A stretch of 64,000 nt of DNA, taken from NCBI GenBank assembly GCA_002269645.1, contig NIVC01000524.1:124001-188000 (forward strand), given 5' to 3'. Positions 3,995-64,000 of this stretch are shown piece by piece. The first letter of the stretch is position 1. Each line of letters begins with the position of its first letter. This DNA is from Macrostomum lignano (Eukaryota). The notes under the pieces are model-generated. The model was not told the origin of the DNA. It saw only the letters and a program-made list of their open reading frames with translations, and did no database searches. A program made the position numbers and the translations under genes.

Positions 3995-4246
3995 CTACAA
4001 TGAAGTCGAATTCTCTTCAAATTGCTTAACATGCAGCACAACTATCTGCTTCTGCTGCTGTTGTTTTTGTTGCTGCTCTTGCTGGGTAGGATTTGGTTGC
4101 TGAGCCGGCTGCTGCTGCGGCTCCACCCGACGGGAACCTTTCCGGTGTCGGTGGACGCCACAGGCCAGTCCCACTCCGGCCAGGCCGAGAAAGAATCCCA
4201 GCACAGACAGGCCGATGATAAGGCTGAGGTTGGGTGGCTGCATCAT
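3995..4246 (-). CDS. Possible small single-pass membrane protein or terminal exon (83 aa ORF: hydrophobic segment, basic stop-transfer motif, Gln-rich tail)
   Basis: LSLIIGLSVLGFFLGLAGVGLACGV followed by HRHRK. GC-rich and exon-like, but no upstream exon in a compatible phase was found. Confidence 0.35.
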   Translation of the reverse strand: MMQPPNLSLIIGLSVLGFFLGLAGVGLACGVHRHRKGSRRVEPQQQPAQQPNPTQQEQQQKQQQQKQIVVLHVKQFEENSTSL

Positions 4247-4305
4247 CGGATGCTGGGCATCTGATAGAGGTGCCGACGGGGCGGTGATTGTTGAGTGCTT
4301 TCTTC

Positions 4306-4306
4306 C

Positions 4307-4363
<57 letters not shown>

Positions 4364-4380
4364 GCCTGTCTGTCTGTCGC

Positions 4381-4463
<83 letters not shown>

Positions 4464-4480
4464 GCCTGTCTGTCTGTCGC

Positions 4481-4543
<63 letters not shown>

Positions 4544-4615
4544 GCCTGCTTGCCTGCCTGCCTGTCTGTCTGTCTGTCTGTCTGTCTATCTGCCTGCCTG
4601 CCTGCCTGCCTGCCT
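4306..4615. repeat. (TCTG)n / (GACA)n microsatellite
   Basis: Tetranucleotide array read directly. Confidence 0.97.
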
Positions 4616-8675: not shown

Positions 8676-28210
<19,535 letters not shown>

Positions 28211-45314: not shown

Positions 45315-46604
45315 ATGCCGGACTTCATCATTGTTGGCAACGGTTCGCATGAGTGCGAAAATGCCACGGAACAGAATGAGCAATACCTGGCTAACAACCC
45401 TATGCTCAGGCCCTACTATGGACTGATGATAGGCCTGACTCTGACCAACAGCCTGCTCAACTTTGCCTGCCTGATGGCGTTCCAATCGATGAGGCCTAAG
45501 CGTCGGTTTAACTTCCTGCTGGCGCGACTGTCTCTGGCGGAGGCCATGTTCCAAGTAAGTAGTTCGCCCCCGTCGAGCCCCTCAACGGAAGAGGGTCAAT
45601 GAAGACTTTTGTTCTGTTTTTGAGGTTTTATCATTGATTCTGTTGCCTGACCGCATCAATGACCGCAGGCGGTCTTCTGCTGCAACCAGGTCTTGGTGCT
45701 GGCCATGGACTCCAACCGGCTGCTGCTGCCCAACCGGCACCTGGCGGTGGCCGTGGCGGCCCTCGGGCCAATAACGCTGTTCCTGGGCACCGCGTTGCAC
45801 GTCTCTAGGAACTGGGCGGTGGTGCTGATCGGCCGGCACCGCTGGCTGGCCGTGGCCCGATCCGACCGTCCGTCAGTGGAGGAGGCCTGCTCAGCCAAGG
45901 ACTGTCGCCTTCTAGCTGGCGGACTCGCCCTCTGCGCCGTCGCGGCCCTGCCGAGACTGTTCGAATTCCAGCCGGTGGTGTGCGAGCCCGCCAGTCAGGT
46001 GACTCACGTCGACCCGTTGCTGATTGGCTCGCAGGCCTATCGGCTGGCCTACCTGGGTGGCCTGCTGTGCCTGTTCCAGAACGCCGGCCCCATCATTTGC
46101 CTGGCCTTCTTCAGCCTGGACTTGGCCCGCCGCCTGGCCAAGCAGGGCCGGCGCCGGCTGTCGGTGCTCGGCCGGCAGAGCGGCCGCCGGGCTCCCTGGA
46201 GCTCCGGCAATCGGACCGTCCTGCTGCTCTGCCTGCTGTTCTGCCTGTGCGAGTGGCCCACTCTGCTGAAGAGCCTGGACCCCGGCACCGTCCTAGGCAA
46301 AGCCGTTGCTTTCGTTGCCAATCTGCTCACCTGCTTGGACTCGTCCTTGAACATCCTGGTGTACCACTGCTCGCACAAGGGCTTCGGTCTGGCTCTGACG
46401 GACCTGCTGTACGGATGCTGCTGCTGGTGCCGGGGCGACTCGGCGGAGAGGCGCAGATCGCGCAGTCGGAGCCTCAGCGTTGCCAGCGGAGTGCGCAGGC
46501 AGTCGAAACTGCATCAGCTGCGGCAGCAGCAGCAGCAGCACAGCCGGCTTTCACCTCACGTCGCGAACGGTCGCGAGCCCAGCATCGAGTTGCTGTCAAT
46601 CTGA
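45315..46604 (+). CDS. Rhodopsin-class 7TM receptor, peptide (FMRFamide-receptor-like) type, ~391 aa; exons 45315-45554 and 45669-46604 (alternative in-frame acceptor at 45690)
   Basis: N-terminal N-glycosylation sequons (NGS, NAT) and seven hydrophobic segments. TM3 end LIGRHRWLAV, TM4 ALPRLFE, TM6 LLFCLCEWP, TM7 NLLTCLDSSLNILVY. Donor CAA/GTAAGT at 45555. Confidence 0.82.
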
Positions 46605-51960: not shown

Positions 51961-52881
51961 TACACTAAATATTTGATTGCATCATATCAGTCTTCACGTA
52001 AATAGTTTTGCAATTAGAAGTATAAATAATTATTTCCCTATTATGACTATTACTAAGCAGCACCGGATTTCCACGGCGCACTAGCGGTTCAGTTTGAGAT
52101 TCGCGCTCAATATCGTATCTTTTTTACTTCTGAATTGCAAACGAAGTAATTGCGTGTTGTGTCTGAGGTAGAAAGACTTAGAACAGACAATGATGAAGCA
52201 AATTTTACACCAGTACGTAAACAATTAAAAGCAGCAAAATGTAAAAAAAATCAAGCATCGCATTTTCCAAGCCGATATTCCCTGTTAAAATCGCCTTCCT
52301 TCCTAGTTGAGTAGAGAACGGAAGAATTGTTTAGTTTTATTAGCATCGCAGAAATTTAAAAGTTATACCCGAATTTATCTACTGCGGTTAGTAGCGCGCA
52401 AAGTTTTTCGCCGCAGTAGTGATCCAGATGTAGAATTCCAGATTTAGATTTAGTAAGATTTTCGTTGGATAATTAAATATTTTGGTTATAAATAAGACTA
52501 AGAATTTAACTACAAAGAATAGGCTTCGTATTCTCTCAGCGGGTTCTATTTTGGTTCATAGTTCCATATAGCATGACAAATCCACTTGTCAACGAGATTA
52601 CTTTTGTGCGTTGATTCAAACGCTTGGCCATAGAAATCTATGGGCCGTTCCGTTTGCATGTCCACACTGTTCGATGTAGCACAACAGAACCTATGCTACA
52701 GTTTCTTCTGAAAATATCTATGGTAAAAAATAGTCCAAAATCATGCAATAAGATAGATGCGACGAAGCTGGAGAGAGTATACAGTATGCTTAAGTACTTC
52801 TAGCCTGAACCCGCGGACATTCCAGCAAAAGCGCTTGAAGATAAGATGGGCTCAGGTGAAAAATTCTATCTTTCAATAGTA

Positions 52882-53490
52882 TACTGTCCGTCAAAAGTTC
52901 TGGAACCCTTGCTACGATGTCTTCTAGCGGACATAATTTCAGTCCGTTTCAATTGTAACTTTATTCAAATGAAAGCTGCGGATCTCAGCTCCATGATGTG
53001 GTCAAGAAAAAGTTTATTCGAAGGAGAGCGTGTGAACAGGCCAGTGTTATGTACACAATGGTTTATAGAAAAAAAGTGAGGAAAAGACAAACAAGCAATT
53101 GTTTTTTACTCTTTTTTACTCTCCCATGAAAGCTGACTGCACAAGAATCCATAAGAGCCTGTTGATTTCAACACAAGTTTTGGCCATAGACTAATGTTAG
53201 CCAGGCTGAACACTGCGCGCAAACCGATTCCTTCCCATGTGTGTTTGCTCCATAGACTCAGCAACCATAGACAATTGCTTGTTTGTCTTTTCCTCACTTT
53301 TTTTCTCTAACCTTTATGTACATAACACTGGCCTGTTCACACGCGCTCCTTCGAATAAACTTTTTCTTGACCACATCATGGAGCTGAGATCCGCAGCTTT
53401 CATTTGAATCAAGTTACAATTGAAACGGACTGAAATTATGTCCGCTAGAAGACATCGTAGCAAGGGTTCCGGAACTTTTGACGGACAGTA
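52882..53490. mobile_element. Tc1/mariner-type MITE, 609 bp, with ~220 bp inverted arms and a TA target duplication
   Basis: TA|TACTGTCCGTCAAAAGTTC...GAACTTTTGACGGACAGTA|TA. Arms at about 52882-53103 and 53271-53490 are near-perfect reverse complements. Confidence 0.88.
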
Positions 53491-54805
53491 TAACTTTCAA
53501 TTTGTTTTATTTTCAATAGTTAGTAACTTGTTCTAGTTCTCGTGCTTGTTAGTGTTCTTGCTGCACAGAATGAGAGAATCTCAATAGATGCGGAGCATAT
53601 TCAGGGTCCTGATGAGGGTTGACTGCGACCCCTTGTTCTGGCCATAGACAGTTGCAGTCATCCCTAGATGGGCCACTCCAGCCACCTATCCGCAGCACGA
53701 AAACCCCGGGGTTTTAACCATAGACTGTAGCTTCTACTGCTCTCAAGCATTAGCAGTAGCAGCTGGTGTCTGTGGCCCTAACCCCTGGGTTTTCAGGGCC
53801 TCGGAGACGGCACATCCGGCACGGCCTTCATCCATGAGACGGCAGCTATAAATATTAGTGACAAATCTCGGTAATATAAGAAGAGTTTGCCAATTTTTGC
53901 CAGGATAAAAAACCCGTTTTAACTTGTCGCTTGTCACACTATTCACTCGCACGATATCAGTGCCATCAGTGTGTGGGGCGGTTTGACTTTGTCTCTTTCA
54001 ATGCTTGTGAGCCTAAATATAGGCTGCAAAAAAGCTATATTTAGCCAGCTAAATATATATTTGTTTATGCATACCAATGCCACTGATTGTGAATTTTCAT
54101 AAGCCATTGAAGTAATCATTTGCAGTTCGTATACTAAGTATACCTCTTCGTACGATAAAATAATGCTTTGAAAAAGAAGATTTTGTGTTTATTTAAATTT
54201 TTGTAGACACAAGTTTAAGTAAATGAAAATGGAATGAAATTTAATAAATTTAATGAATATTCTTATTCTAATAATGAGCTGAACTTGACAACTTAGCTTA
54301 CTGAACTCTGTACTATAACTAATATTTTCGAAAATCAGGTTAAAGATTGAAAGTGCGAGCATTTATAACACGGGTTTGGTGCGAAAAATGTGCAAAAATA
54401 GTTATAATCTGCGGTTGGTGCAATAAAAGATTGTTGATAAAAATAGGTTACCATGTAGTAAATGTACGCACCCTGAAGCAAAGAGGTGTACGAAGTTGAA
54501 ATAGCGAAGGCCTGAGCTCTGTATTGTTGTACTATCTATACAAAGATAGTGGCATTCCCCGTGAACCTTGCTACATTATAATCGTGGCGGAATACGCGTG
54601 AAAAAAATGACGCACAAATGTAGAATTCGCATTGCAACCCGGAGGGCAGAATGTGTAGAGAACTTGCACAACTGAGAGGAACAATACAGAACGGAGAGGC
54701 AGAGATGAAGCTTCTGGAGTCTGAGAACATGCCTGTATACGCTATACCCCTTTAGGCTGCTGCTGAGTGAATTTCTACAGCTAAATGAGGGACAGAGGAC
54801 AGAAG

Positions 54806-55351
54806 TCAGTGCATACCGCTGCGCAAGCGGTGACCAGTGGGCTCGTGCAAGATCACTCGGCACTCTCTCGGTCGCAGCTCCGTAGCCAGACGGTAGACTG
54901 ACAGGCCTCGACAGGTTCCAACAAACTGGTAGGTTGGAACGGGCATCGGCAGCGACTGGCAGCTGTACTTGCTGAAAGGCAGCATTGAATTAATAGGCTT
55001 TGAGCGGCTCAAGCAGGTGGTGTCGTAATAGGCAGGCGTGAGCAGGCTCGGGTCATGCATGAGGCAGGTTCGCTTGCTGCAGAATCCATCGTGGCCTGTG
55101 TGGTCCTTGCAGCGGATGACTCTCTTGCCGCCTCCGTTGACGCTGTGCTTGTTGGAGTCGGCCGTCAGGATGCCTCCATCCTGCAGGTGCTGGTCGTACA
55201 TGTCCGAGCACAGGCGGCGTACTTTGTCGCGCAGGATGATGTCGCTGTTTCTGCCTCTGGTAGGGAGGCTGGAACCCTCATCTGGTATCCACAGCAACAG
55301 GAGGATCAACGAAACCAGCAACATCTGCAGCCTCGGAAGCTGGATCTCCAT
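54806..55351 (-). CDS. Secreted cysteine-rich protein, 181 aa, single exon; tentative divergent IL-17/PTTH-type cystine-knot
   Basis: Hydrophobic signal peptide (LLVSLILLLLWIP), 8 Cys, GC-rich CpG-normal ORF in AT-rich surroundings. The family assignment is by eye only. Confidence 0.75.
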   Translation of the reverse strand: MEIQLPRLQMLLVSLILLLLWIPDEGSSLPTRGRNSDIILRDKVRRLCSDMYDQHLQDGGILTADSNKHSVNGGGKRVIRCKDHTGHDGFCSKRTCLMHDPSLLTPAYYDTTCLSRSKPINSMLPFSKYSCQSLPMPVPTYQFVGTCRGLSVYRLATELRPRECRVILHEPTGHRLRSGMH

Positions 55352-55914
55352 GAATTTTATTTACTCGTGTGAGAAGTTGTAGCCGAGCTTGTTGTTTTGA
55401 TCTGCTTGAGAACAGATTACTGCAATCATTTTTATGCAACCCGCTGTCGGCAAACCCGCGGGTTGCCAAGTGGTGTCCTGTCGCGTCAGCTCACTTTGAC
55501 GTGGCTCAGTTCTTTAGCTGCCTTAGCCACGCGTGGCGGGCTATATTTAACAGGCGCGTCCTGGTTGGCATGCAACTAAAAATAGCACCGATGCACACTT
55601 CTTGCAAGCTATGCGGCAGGACTACATTTGAACTATTTTTAGTAAAAAAATGTTATATTAAGAATAAACGAAATGTATTAGACCTTTTTTACTTTGTCGC
55701 TGTTGAACTGTCCAACTGAATGAGGTACTGTCTGTAGGCTTTAGCACCCGATATCTTACCCAGTTTTTACAAAGTTTTTCGGAGTGTCCATATCGTGTGA
55801 TATAGACTAAAAAAGACAAGAATAGAAGCCACTATGGCTTCAGATTCAAATACGTGTATTTTATGTGCTAAATCAACTATTCACTTGAAATTAAAGAGAA
55901 AACTTGGGGCGGAG

Positions 55915-60345: not shown

Positions 60346-64000
<3,655 letters not shown>

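What the first reader, a model, noticed from the sequence alone, without database searches (positions are those of the whole stretch)
54806..55351. Candidate divergent IL-17/PTTH-like secreted cystine-knot signalling protein
Seen: signal peptide, 8 Cys (48, 81, 91, 96, 113, 131, 147, 164), and a GKR processing-type site at 75-77. The C-terminal half reads C..HDPSLLTPAYYDTTCL..KYSCQSLPMPVPTYQFVGTCRGLSVYRLATELRPREC. Known: invertebrate IL-17 domains follow roughly C-P..D.NR.P..I.EA.C..C.PV...VPVL....C.G...Y......V.V.C.C, and PTTH/Trunk are related proteins released from precursors. Inference: the spacing of DP/P, the YSC..PVP strand, C.G..VY and the late Cys fits this fold, but the final Cys of the CxC pair is missing, so the disulfide wiring would be novel. 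This is the best candidate here for an undescribed cytokine or hormone.
Basis: partly seen in the sequence, partly recalled or inferred. Interest (0 to 1): 0.75.

Follow-up and report, generated by a model that had tools for sequence, protein, structure and literature searches.

The report
Divergent IL-17-like secreted flatworm protein
An unannotated single-exon gene of the flatworm Macrostomum lignano encodes a small secreted eight-cysteine protein whose core weakly but specifically resembles invertebrate interleukin-17 cytokines. This makes it a plausible, still unproven, flatworm signalling ligand.

Summary
Window 54806-55351 (-) is an intact 181-codon ORF with a signal-peptide-like N-terminus, Cys at 48/81/91/96/113/131/147/164 and GKR at 75-77. 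It looks like a real gene. GC3 is 0.75 against 41-42% GC in the flanks. An intact, indel-free copy lies in a homeologous contig. A 35%-identical paralogue (Mlig027775g1 and two near-identical Mlig031341 copies) sits in a transcript-based annotation and keeps all eight Cys.

The window is Macrostomum lignano, and no gene is annotated at this locus.

Pfam, PDB sequence search, AlphaFold2 (pLDDT 42-45) and Foldseek gave nothing. A profile of the family does align in register with an invertebrate IL-17 alignment: hhalign probability 84%, P 7.5e-6, score 34.7, against 11.3±2.2 for 300 column shuffles. It matched no other cystine-knot family. Knot Cys 1, 2, 4 and 5 are kept and Cys 3 and 6 are both missing, which is the published "T1C" IL-17 pattern and therefore not new wiring.

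The match is weak in absolute terms. Held-out genuine IL-17s score 40-88 bits, the paralogue about 20 (the same as Bombyx PTTH) and the candidate about 7. The GKR site is not conserved.

Verdict: probably a highly derived IL-17-type secreted ligand. Membership, fold, transcription and receptor are unproven.

The parts
54806..55351 (-). Complete single-exon CDS, 181 codons plus TGA stop. It is not annotated in GenBank Mlig_3_7.
   Evidence: ORF list. GC3 0.75 against flanks at 0.41-0.42 GC. Intact homeologous copy at L002 4024-4569. The exact protein is absent from the 15-billion-protein collection. No gene is called at the equivalent place in L002.
55268..55351 (-). Residues 1-28: predicted signal peptide, with cleavage inferred after GSS28.
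   Evidence: Read from the sequence: charged n-region, 15-residue hydrophobic core, small residues at -3 and -1. AF2 places a helix at 6/7-20. The paralogue also has a hydrophobic leader. No signal-peptide predictor was run.
55106..55267 (-). Residues 29-82: N-terminal region with a predicted helix (35-56), conserved Cys48 and Cys81, and the non-conserved GKR at 75-77.
   Evidence: AF2 secondary structure, pLDDT 66-70 over residues 41-60. The alignment with the paralogues shows GKR replaced by GNAT.
54860..55105 (-). Residues 83-164: IL-17-type cystine-knot-like core. Proposed assignments: Cys91 = knot Cys1, Cys113 = Cys2, Cys131 = Cys4, Cys147 = hairpin Cys, Cys164 = Cys5. Cys96 is an extra cysteine.
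   Evidence: hhalign of the family profile against the invertebrate IL-17 alignment: probability 84.1%, P 7.5e-6, 81 columns. AF2 predicts a beta-hairpin at 138-147/150-159 with pLDDT about 60-64.
54809..54859 (-). Residues 165-181: C-terminal tail. ILHE and the terminal H are shared with the paralogue, which has a 13-residue insert here.
   Evidence: Alignment A2. The shared tail argues that the stop codon is genuine and that no downstream exon is missing.
55429..55436 (-). TATA-like CATAAAAA, about 80 nt upstream of the ATG. It is a possible core promoter and this is inference only.
   Evidence: Read from the sequence. The 500 bp upstream are 97.4% identical between the two genomic copies. 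No transcript data are available.

Best explanation
The ORF is a real, unannotated, single-exon gene of Macrostomum lignano. It encodes a secreted protein of about 153 residues after signal-peptide removal.

It belongs to a small family so far seen only in this species, made of two paralogue groups that are 35% identical. The C-terminal ~80 residues of the family are most likely a strongly derived IL-17-type cystine knot.

Inferred disulfides: Cys91-Cys131 (knot pair 1/4) and Cys113-Cys164 (pair 2/5) tie two beta-hairpins together. Pair 3/6 is lost, as in the T1C pattern. Cys48, 81, 96 and 147 form two further bridges.

By analogy with IL-17 ligands, the protein would act as a secreted dimeric ligand for a cell-surface receptor. 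That would be an IL-17R-type FN3/SEFIR receptor if the flatworm has one, signalling in immunity, wound response or neuromodulation.

Shown: the ORF, its codon bias, its intact second copy, its paralogue, the conserved Cys framework, and the specific in-register profile match to invertebrate IL-17. Inferred: the fold, disulfide pairing, dimerisation, receptor and biological role.
For: **Gene reality.** Searches cover the frame, GC3 and the indel-free second copy. Searches cover paralogue P0001 (Mlig027775g1) and the Mlig031341g1/g2 copies, with all eight Cys invariant. The GenBank annotation is transcript-based, so the paralogues are transcribed (PMC5730564).

**IL-17 likeness.**
- An HMM of 35 invertebrate IL-17 domains (sequences from PMC4517768 S1) gives P0001 20.4 bits. 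None of 2000 composition-preserving shuffles reached this (maximum 13.6). The candidate scores 6.9 bits, reached by 8 of 2000 shuffles.
- hhalign of the family profile against the IL-17 alignment gives probability 84.1%, P 7.5e-6 and score 34.7 over 81 columns. The reversed query scores 12.7. Three hundred column shuffles give mean 11.3, sd 2.2 and maximum 19.9.
- The same register appears for each phylum alone. Probability stays at 75-81% when any one phylum is left out.
- In the reverse direction, 11 of 35 IL-17s exceed the 99th percentile of shuffles against the family HMM. The best is C. elegans T22H6.1 at 18.9 bits.
- NGF, Spaetzle, PTTH, noggin, TGF-beta, PDGF/VEGF and the glycoprotein-hormone alpha and beta chains all give probability 0.2% or less and 1.3 bits or less. 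The comparator sequences were checked with Pfam.
- Cys3 and Cys6 are missing together, which is a known IL-17 subtype.
- The AF2 hairpin at 138-159 coincides with IL-17 strands 3-4.
Against: - Pfam IL17 (PF06083) does not hit the candidate or any paralogue, even at E<=10. The PDB sequence and profile searches were empty.
- Genuine IL-17s held out by phylum score 40-88 bits. P0001 scores 18-22 and the candidate 3-9. Bombyx PTTH, a different family, scores 21.6.
- The signal rests largely on the Cys framework. With Cys masked, the hhalign score falls to 15.6-19.8.
- The candidate alone reaches only 2.7% probability, so the link is transitive through the paralogue.
- AF2 confidence is low (pLDDT 41.7 and 45.1) and Foldseek finds no knot fold.
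- No transcript is annotated at this locus or at its homeologue.
- dN/dS between the two copies is about 0.5 from only 10 differences, so it does not demonstrate constraint.
- I could not check whether M. lignano has an IL-17R/SEFIR receptor.
Confidence: 0.5

Rival explanations
1. It is a lineage-specific, fast-evolving secreted cysteine-rich protein with another fold and job, such as a gland, adhesive, seminal-fluid or antimicrobial product. Its likeness to IL-17 is then a coincidence of Cys spacing and beta-rich composition.
For: - Only one relative was found among 1.84 billion representatives, and it is from the same species.
- There is no Pfam, PDB or Foldseek match.
- Masking Cys removes most of the hhalign score.
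- The family scores 20-60 bits below genuine IL-17s.
- UniRef names one paralogue 'DUF19 domain-containing'. This shows that Cys-rich profiles can pick up this family at borderline level.
Against: - Composition-preserving and column-shuffle controls never approach the real scores.
- Sixteen real cystine-knot proteins of other families score 1.3 bits or less against the family HMM.
- The register is identical for four phyla taken separately.
- Non-Cys matches (DP after Cys1, RVL before the hairpin Cys, G-x-x-Y after it) fall in the published IL-17 motifs.
- The DUF19 name is not reproduced by the Pfam copy used here.
Confidence: 0.3
2. It is an intact but silent or decaying duplicate. The ORF is a recent relic of the paralogue family and makes no functional product.
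For: - The transcript-based GenBank annotation has no gene at the homeologous locus.
- The exact protein is in no collection.
- Substitution rate in the ORF (1.8%) is close to that of the flanks (2-3%), and dN/dS is about 0.5 from 10 changes.
- The locus lies among minisatellites.
Against: - At 35% identity to the paralogue the duplication is old. Even so, the frame, the signal peptide, all eight Cys and the shared tail survive in two separate genomic copies.
- GC3 bias is retained.
- There are no indels in the ORF against 13 in 1.8 kb of flank.
- The submitted annotation excluded transcripts overlapping repeats, so absence from it is weak evidence.
Confidence: 0.12
3. It is a PTTH/Trunk/noggin-type or neurotrophin-type cystine-knot ligand acting on a Torso-like receptor tyrosine kinase, or acting as a BMP antagonist.
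For: The invertebrate IL-17 HMM scores Bombyx PTTH (21.6 bits) as high as the paralogue. PMC11087794 treats Trunk/PTTH and IL-17 as related. An assignment somewhere in that wider group is therefore conceivable.
Against: - hhalign of the family against PTTH, noggin, NGF and Spaetzle gives probability 0.1% and scores 8-12, which is shuffle level.
- The family HMM gives PTTH -0.6 bits.
- There is no CxGxC or CxC motif.
- Only one PTTH sequence and no Trunk sequence were available, so this test is thin.
Confidence: 0.04

Closest known systems
Invertebrate IL-17 ligands of the T1C disulfide type (PMC11087794), for example oyster EKC32654, pearl-oyster 72074.t1 and C. elegans F25D1.3/T22H6.1
   Same: - Secreted, with the domain at the C-terminus.
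- Knot Cys 1, 2, 4 and 5 and the hairpin Cys align in register.
- Spacing from Cys1 to Cys2 is 21 residues.
- Cys 3 and 6 are absent.
- DP follows Cys1, and G-x-x-Y follows the hairpin Cys.
   Different: - There is no Pfam IL17 hit.
- HMM scores are 20-60 bits below genuine members.
- The NR[IYF]P and EA[RK]C motifs are lost.
- There is an extra Cys96 inside strand 1, and Cys48 lies in a predicted N-terminal helix.
- No receptor is known in flatworms.
Hypothetical proteins BOX15_Mlig027775g1 and Mlig031341g1/g2 of M. lignano (PAA67157.1, PAA72845.1, PAA93834.1)
   Same: These are true paralogues: 35% identity, E 2.3e-6 in 1.84 billion proteins, all eight Cys, DPSLL.P.Y, KP, F.G.C.G.SVYR.A, an ILHE tail, and a single exon.
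   Different: - They have two more Cys (RCTC and EECD) and a 13-residue C-terminal insert.
- They carry an N-glycosylation sequon where the candidate has GKR.
- They are annotated from transcripts, which the candidate is not.
PTTH / Trunk (insect cystine-knot neurohormones)
   Same: They are secreted cystine-knot ligands. PTTH resembles IL-17 profiles to the same weak degree as this family does.
   Different: There is no direct similarity to the family (probability 0.1%, -0.6 bits). PTTH keeps the terminal CxC.
Crustacean female sex hormone (CFSH), an IL-17-domain hormone of decapods
   Same: It is an example of an IL-17-type knot used as a hormone, with about eight Cys and a precursor peptide. 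PMC11087794 reports that it binds shrimp IL-17R. The other points are from my own knowledge.
   Different: It was not compared here because no sequence was to hand. It is restricted to arthropods.
DUF19 (PF01579), the UniRef name of paralogue P0004
   Same: It is a Cys-rich extracellular domain. The name appears in UniRef.
   Different: The Pfam copy used here gives no hit to any paralogue or to the candidate at E<=10.

Membership tests
IL-17 (Pfam PF06083) | Match to the curated family HMM at or above the gathering score (24 bits) | tested here: not met
   There is no hit at E<=10 for the candidate or for P0001, P0003 or P0004. Human IL-17A (110.8 bits) and a T1C-like oyster IL-17 (32.6 bits) pass in the same tool.
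IL-17 (invertebrate T1 type) | Profile-level similarity to bona fide invertebrate IL-17 domains | tested here: inconclusive
   hhalign gives probability 84.1% and P 7.5e-6, far above the shuffles. However, HMM scores are 20.4 bits (paralogue) and 6.9 bits (candidate), against 40-88 bits for held-out true members.
IL-17 (invertebrate T1 type) | Knot cysteines in register (1/4 and 2/5 kept, 3/6 optional as in T1C) | tested here: met
   Cys91, 113, 131 and 164 align with Cys1, 2, 4 and 5. Cys147 aligns with the hairpin Cys. Cys3 and Cys6 are both absent. The definition is from PMC11087794. The pairing itself is inferred.
IL-17 (invertebrate T1 type) | Two-hairpin cystine-knot fold | tested here: inconclusive
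   AF2 gives pLDDT 41.7 (single sequence) and 45.1 (4-sequence MSA), pTM 0.40. Only the hairpin at 138-159 is moderately confident. Foldseek against the PDB finds nothing at E<=0.001.
IL-17 (invertebrate T1 type) | Secretion signal | tested here: met
   An N-terminal hydrophobic leader is read from the sequence and is predicted helical by AF2. No dedicated predictor was run.
IL-17 pathway | Cognate IL-17R (FN3 + SEFIR) and CIKS/Act1 adaptor in the same genome | not testable with these tools
Literature searches found no report of SEFIR or IL-17 in flatworms.
PTTH / Trunk / Noggin (PF05806 clan) | Profile similarity and a terminal CxC knot motif | tested here: not met
   hhalign gives probability 0.1% against Bombyx PTTH and human noggin. 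The family HMM gives -0.6 and -1.0 bits. There is no CxC in the candidate. Only one PTTH sequence and no Trunk sequence were tested.
Neurotrophin / Spaetzle, TGF-beta, PDGF/VEGF, glycoprotein hormones | Profile similarity and the CxGxC / CxC signature | tested here: not met
   All give probability 0.2% or less and 1.3 bits or less. The comparator sequences were verified by Pfam.
Prohormone with dibasic processing | Conserved KR/RR cleavage site separating the propeptide from the mature domain | tested here: not met
   GKR 75-77 aligns to GNATVT in the paralogues. Conserved Cys48 lies on the 'propeptide' side.
DUF19 (PF01579) | Match to the family HMM | tested here: not met
   No hit at E<=10, despite the UniRef name of P0004.

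The most novel reading that the evidence does not exclude
The gene and its paralogues form a flatworm-specific branch of the IL-17/Trunk-PTTH cystine-knot ligand superfamily. The branch is too diverged for curated models to detect. It would supply Platyhelminthes with an IL-17-type cytokine or hormone that no study I could find has reported. Because M. lignano supports transgenesis and RNAi, the role of such a ligand in wound response, regeneration or immunity could be tested directly.
Probability: 0.3. Interest if true: 0.6.

Novelty: new variant of a known kind. Interest (0 to 1): 0.4.

Why it matters
IL-17-type ligands are described from cnidarians to vertebrates. The comparative papers I could read do not mention flatworms.

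If this family is the flatworm version, it would show how far a cystine-knot cytokine can drift while keeping its Cys frame. It would also give a transgenic, regenerating model animal a candidate ligand for experiments.

On the practical side, a transcript-based annotation missed an intact small secreted gene lying among minisatellites.

If the likeness is coincidental, the finding reduces to one more orphan secreted Cys-rich protein of one species.

Tried and rejected
**Searches that found nothing useful**
- Pfam on the candidate and the three paralogues at E<=10: no hit.
- PDB sequence search with the protein and with the two-sequence profile: only chance hits or none.
- Word-indexed search of 5.8 billion protein clusters with the protein: nothing. 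With the profile it returned only P0001.
- The second phmmer hit, P0002, is a 2139-aa protein of repeated modules. It matched on short 'YDPSVLQP'-type stretches and I rejected it as spurious.
- tblastn for further paralogues in the window, L001 and L002: none.
- Paper searches for the Mlig gene identifiers and for IL-17 or SEFIR in flatworms: nothing usable.

**Structure**
- AF2 on the single sequence and with a four-sequence MSA: low confidence. Foldseek against the PDB gave only meaningless matches.

**Ideas checked and dropped**
- A possible downstream exon after Cys164 (a weak GTGATC donor). I rejected it because the tail ILHE...H is shared with the single-exon paralogue.
- The bacterial promoter/terminator scan is irrelevant for this eukaryote.
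- dN/dS between the two genomic copies has too few differences to decide anything.

Full report
**1. What is there**

The minus strand of window 54806-55351 carries an ATG-to-TGA ORF of 181 codons. Its translation has Cys at 48, 81, 91, 96, 113, 131, 147 and 164 and GKR at 75-77. The first 28 residues (MEIQLPR, then a 15-residue hydrophobic core, then PDEGSS) read as a signal peptide. This is my reading of the sequence and no predictor was available. AlphaFold2 makes residues 6/7-20 helical.

**2. Organism and setting**

The window is metazoan and full of minisatellites, with no tRNA or Rfam hits. It carries prominin-like exons and a CCDC40 exon. The CCDC40 ORF is 99% identical to protein P0005, which maps to Macrostomum lignano assembly GCA_002269645.1, contig NIVC01001392.1. 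That contig stretch (L002) is not the window itself. It is a 94-97% identical second copy of window 49.6-64 kb. This fits the redundancy of that neopolyploid assembly (PMC5730564). The candidate sits in an intergenic stretch of both copies. In L002 no gene is called there, and the exact protein is absent from the 15-billion-protein collection.

**3. Is it a gene?**

GC is 58% inside the ORF and 41-42% in the 500 bp on either side. GC at codon positions 1/2/3 is 0.53/0.46/0.75, the pattern of the window's other exons, which have GC3 0.66-0.86.

The L002 copy (4024-4569, minus) keeps the same 181-codon frame. It differs at 10 nucleotides, of which three are synonymous single changes, five are nonsynonymous single changes, and two fall in one codon. 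There are no indels. By contrast, 1.8 kb of flank holds 13 indel events. The substitution rate is about the same as in the flanks, and dN/dS of about 0.5 rests on too few changes to prove constraint.

The stronger argument comes from an exhaustive phmmer search of 1.84 billion representative proteins. It finds one real relative, P0001 (E 2.3e-6, 35% identity over residues 44-157). P0001 is the M. lignano hypothetical protein BOX15_Mlig027775g1. It is single-exon and has two near-identical copies, Mlig031341g1 and g2. All eight Cys of the candidate are invariant in the alignment. So are DPSLL.P.Y, KP, F.G.C.G.SVYR.A and the C-terminal ILHE...H.

An old duplication that still keeps the frame, the leader, the Cys frame and the tail points to a functional protein family. 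The shared tail also rules out a missing downstream exon. The GenBank annotation of this assembly was built from transcripts only, and it excluded transcripts overlapping repeats (PMC5730564). The paralogues are therefore transcribed. The lack of a model at the candidate locus is only weak evidence against its expression.

**4. Standard family and fold tests**

Pfam gives nothing for the candidate or any paralogue, even at E<=10. PDB sequence and profile searches are empty. AlphaFold2 gives pLDDT 41.7 without an alignment and 45.1 (pTM 0.40) with the four available sequences. Only an N-terminal helix (35-56) and a hairpin (138-147/150-159) reach pLDDT 60-70. Foldseek against the PDB returns no match better than E 0.58.

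**5. Direct test of the IL-17 idea**

I took 35 invertebrate IL-17 sequences (nematodes, annelid, molluscs, Daphnia, sea urchin) from the S1 Dataset of PMC4517768. I aligned their domains and compared them with the flatworm family.

- *HMM of the IL-17 domains.* P0001 scores 20.4 bits, and none of 2000 composition-preserving shuffles reaches that (maximum 13.6). The candidate scores 6.9 bits, reached by 8 of 2000 shuffles.
- *Profile against profile.* hhalign of the five-sequence family alignment against the IL-17 alignment gives probability 84.1%, P 7.5e-6 and score 34.7 over 81 columns, covering candidate residues 83-164.
- *Controls.* The reversed query scores 12.7. Three hundred column-shuffled queries give mean 11.3, sd 2.2 and maximum 19.9.
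- *Robustness.* Each phylum alone gives the same register, with P between 3e-4 and 5e-3. Leaving any one phylum out keeps probability at 75-81%.
- *Reverse direction.* Against the family HMM, 11 of 35 IL-17s exceed the 99th percentile of their own shuffles. The best is C. elegans T22H6.1 at 18.9 bits, again in the same register.
NGF/BDNF/NT3/NT4, Spaetzle, Bombyx PTTH, noggin, four TGF-beta members, VEGF/PDGF, glycoprotein-hormone alpha and beta chains, and human IL-17A/F all give hhalign probability 0.2% or less and 1.3 bits or less against the family HMM.

**6. What the alignment says**

IL-17 Cys1 (the 'CPW' cysteine) falls on Cys91, which reads CPV in the paralogue. Cys2 falls on Cys113, with the canonical 21 residues between them. 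Cys4 falls on Cys131, the hairpin-turn Cys on Cys147 (followed by G-x-x-Y as in IL-17), and Cys5 on Cys164.

Cys3 and Cys6 are both absent. PMC11087794 defines exactly this as the T1C type: loss of pair 3/6, with pairs 1/4 and 2/5 still tying the four strands. Several reference IL-17s also lack the final Cys. One of them, oyster EKC32654, passes Pfam IL17. The 'novel wiring' is therefore a known subtype.

Cys48, 81, 96 and 147 would make two further bridges. All pairings are inferred.

**7. Calibration and caveats**

When each phylum is held out of the IL-17 HMM, its genuine IL-17s still score 40-88 bits. P0001 scores 18-22 and the candidate 3-9. Bombyx PTTH, a different family regarded as related to IL-17, scores 21.6. 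The flatworm family therefore lies as far from canonical IL-17 as PTTH does.

Masking Cys reduces the hhalign score to 15.6-19.8, still in register but near the top of the shuffle range. The candidate alone reaches only 2.7% probability, so its link to IL-17 runs through its paralogue. UniRef names one paralogue 'DUF19 domain-containing', which I could not reproduce. That name is a reminder that Cys-rich profiles give borderline matches.

For these reasons I do not file the protein as a member of the IL-17 family. I call it a strongly derived IL-17-type knot candidate.

**8.

The GKR site is not conserved, since the paralogues have GNATVT there. It also has a conserved Cys on its N-terminal side. 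Two other dibasic pairs (45-46 and 93-94) occur in this basic protein. Prohormone-style release is therefore unsupported. PTTH/Trunk likeness is not supported either, although only one PTTH sequence and no Trunk sequence could be tested.

**9. Mechanism**

The most likely picture (about 0.5) is a secreted cystine-knot ligand that is dimeric like other IL-17-type ligands. It would act on a surface receptor, and its role in immunity, wounding, regeneration or neuromodulation is unknown.

The rivals are:
- an orphan secreted Cys-rich protein of another fold, such as a gland, adhesive, seminal-fluid or antimicrobial product (about 0.3);
- an intact but silent duplicate (about 0.12);
- a PTTH/Trunk/noggin- or neurotrophin-type ligand (about 0.04).

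I could not test for IL-17R/SEFIR genes in M. lignano. The IL-17 comparative papers I read and the paper searches I ran turned up no report of IL-17-pathway genes in flatworms.

**10. Verdict**

This is a real, unannotated small secreted-protein gene of M. lignano. The claims of new disulfide wiring, GKR processing and PTTH likeness are not borne out. Interest is moderate. It would rise if transcription, the fold and a receptor were shown.

Noticed in passing
window 52880-53492: A foldback or MITE-like element with 195-nt arms (52880-53074 and 53298-53492) that are 95% complementary and 223 nt apart. It is exactly the stretch missing from the homeologous copy L002, so it is an insertion difference between the two genomic copies.
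   Followed up: partly
window 4.2-4.9k, 5.8-7.1k, 7.6-8.3k, 9.0-10.5k, 11.0-14.3k, 15.0-15.5k, 18.3-19.0k, 21.0-22.4k, 24.0-28.2k, 42.4-43.3k, 44.2-45.1k, 51.0-52.0k, 55.9-57.0k: Many long minisatellite arrays produce multi-frame repeat 'ORFs' of up to 1079 aa on both strands. This fits the 15% simple and tandem repeat content reported for M. lignano.
   Followed up: no
window 45693-46604 (+): A 303-aa ORF with the highest GC3 in the window (0.855) and hydrophobic segments, but no Pfam hit. It is probably an exon of an unassigned membrane protein and looks GPCR-like by eye only.
   Followed up: no
window 16664-21199 (-): Three large ORFs, two of which have Pfam Prominin matches (profile positions 401-495 and 744-799). 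These are exons of a prominin-like gene interrupted by tandem repeats.
   Followed up: no
window 60909-63110 (+): A CCDC40 exon, 99% identical to P0005 of M. lignano and 58% identical to oyster CCDC40. It was used to identify the organism.
   Followed up: yes
L002 402-1588 (about window 50.0-51.2k): The only other gene annotated near the homeologous locus encodes a 252-aa product with no Pfam hit. It abuts or overlaps the repeat array at window 51.0-52.0k, so its coding status looks doubtful.
   Followed up: no
P0004 (PAA93834.1), paralogue locus: UniRef names this paralogue 'DUF19 domain-containing protein', although it differs from P0001 by one residue. The Pfam copy used here finds no DUF19 match or any other match.
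   Followed up: partly
L001 581-3711: The paralogue Mlig027775g1 lies 1.3 kb downstream of a cytochrome P450 gene. The candidate locus shows no shared neighbours with it within the sequence held.
   Followed up: no
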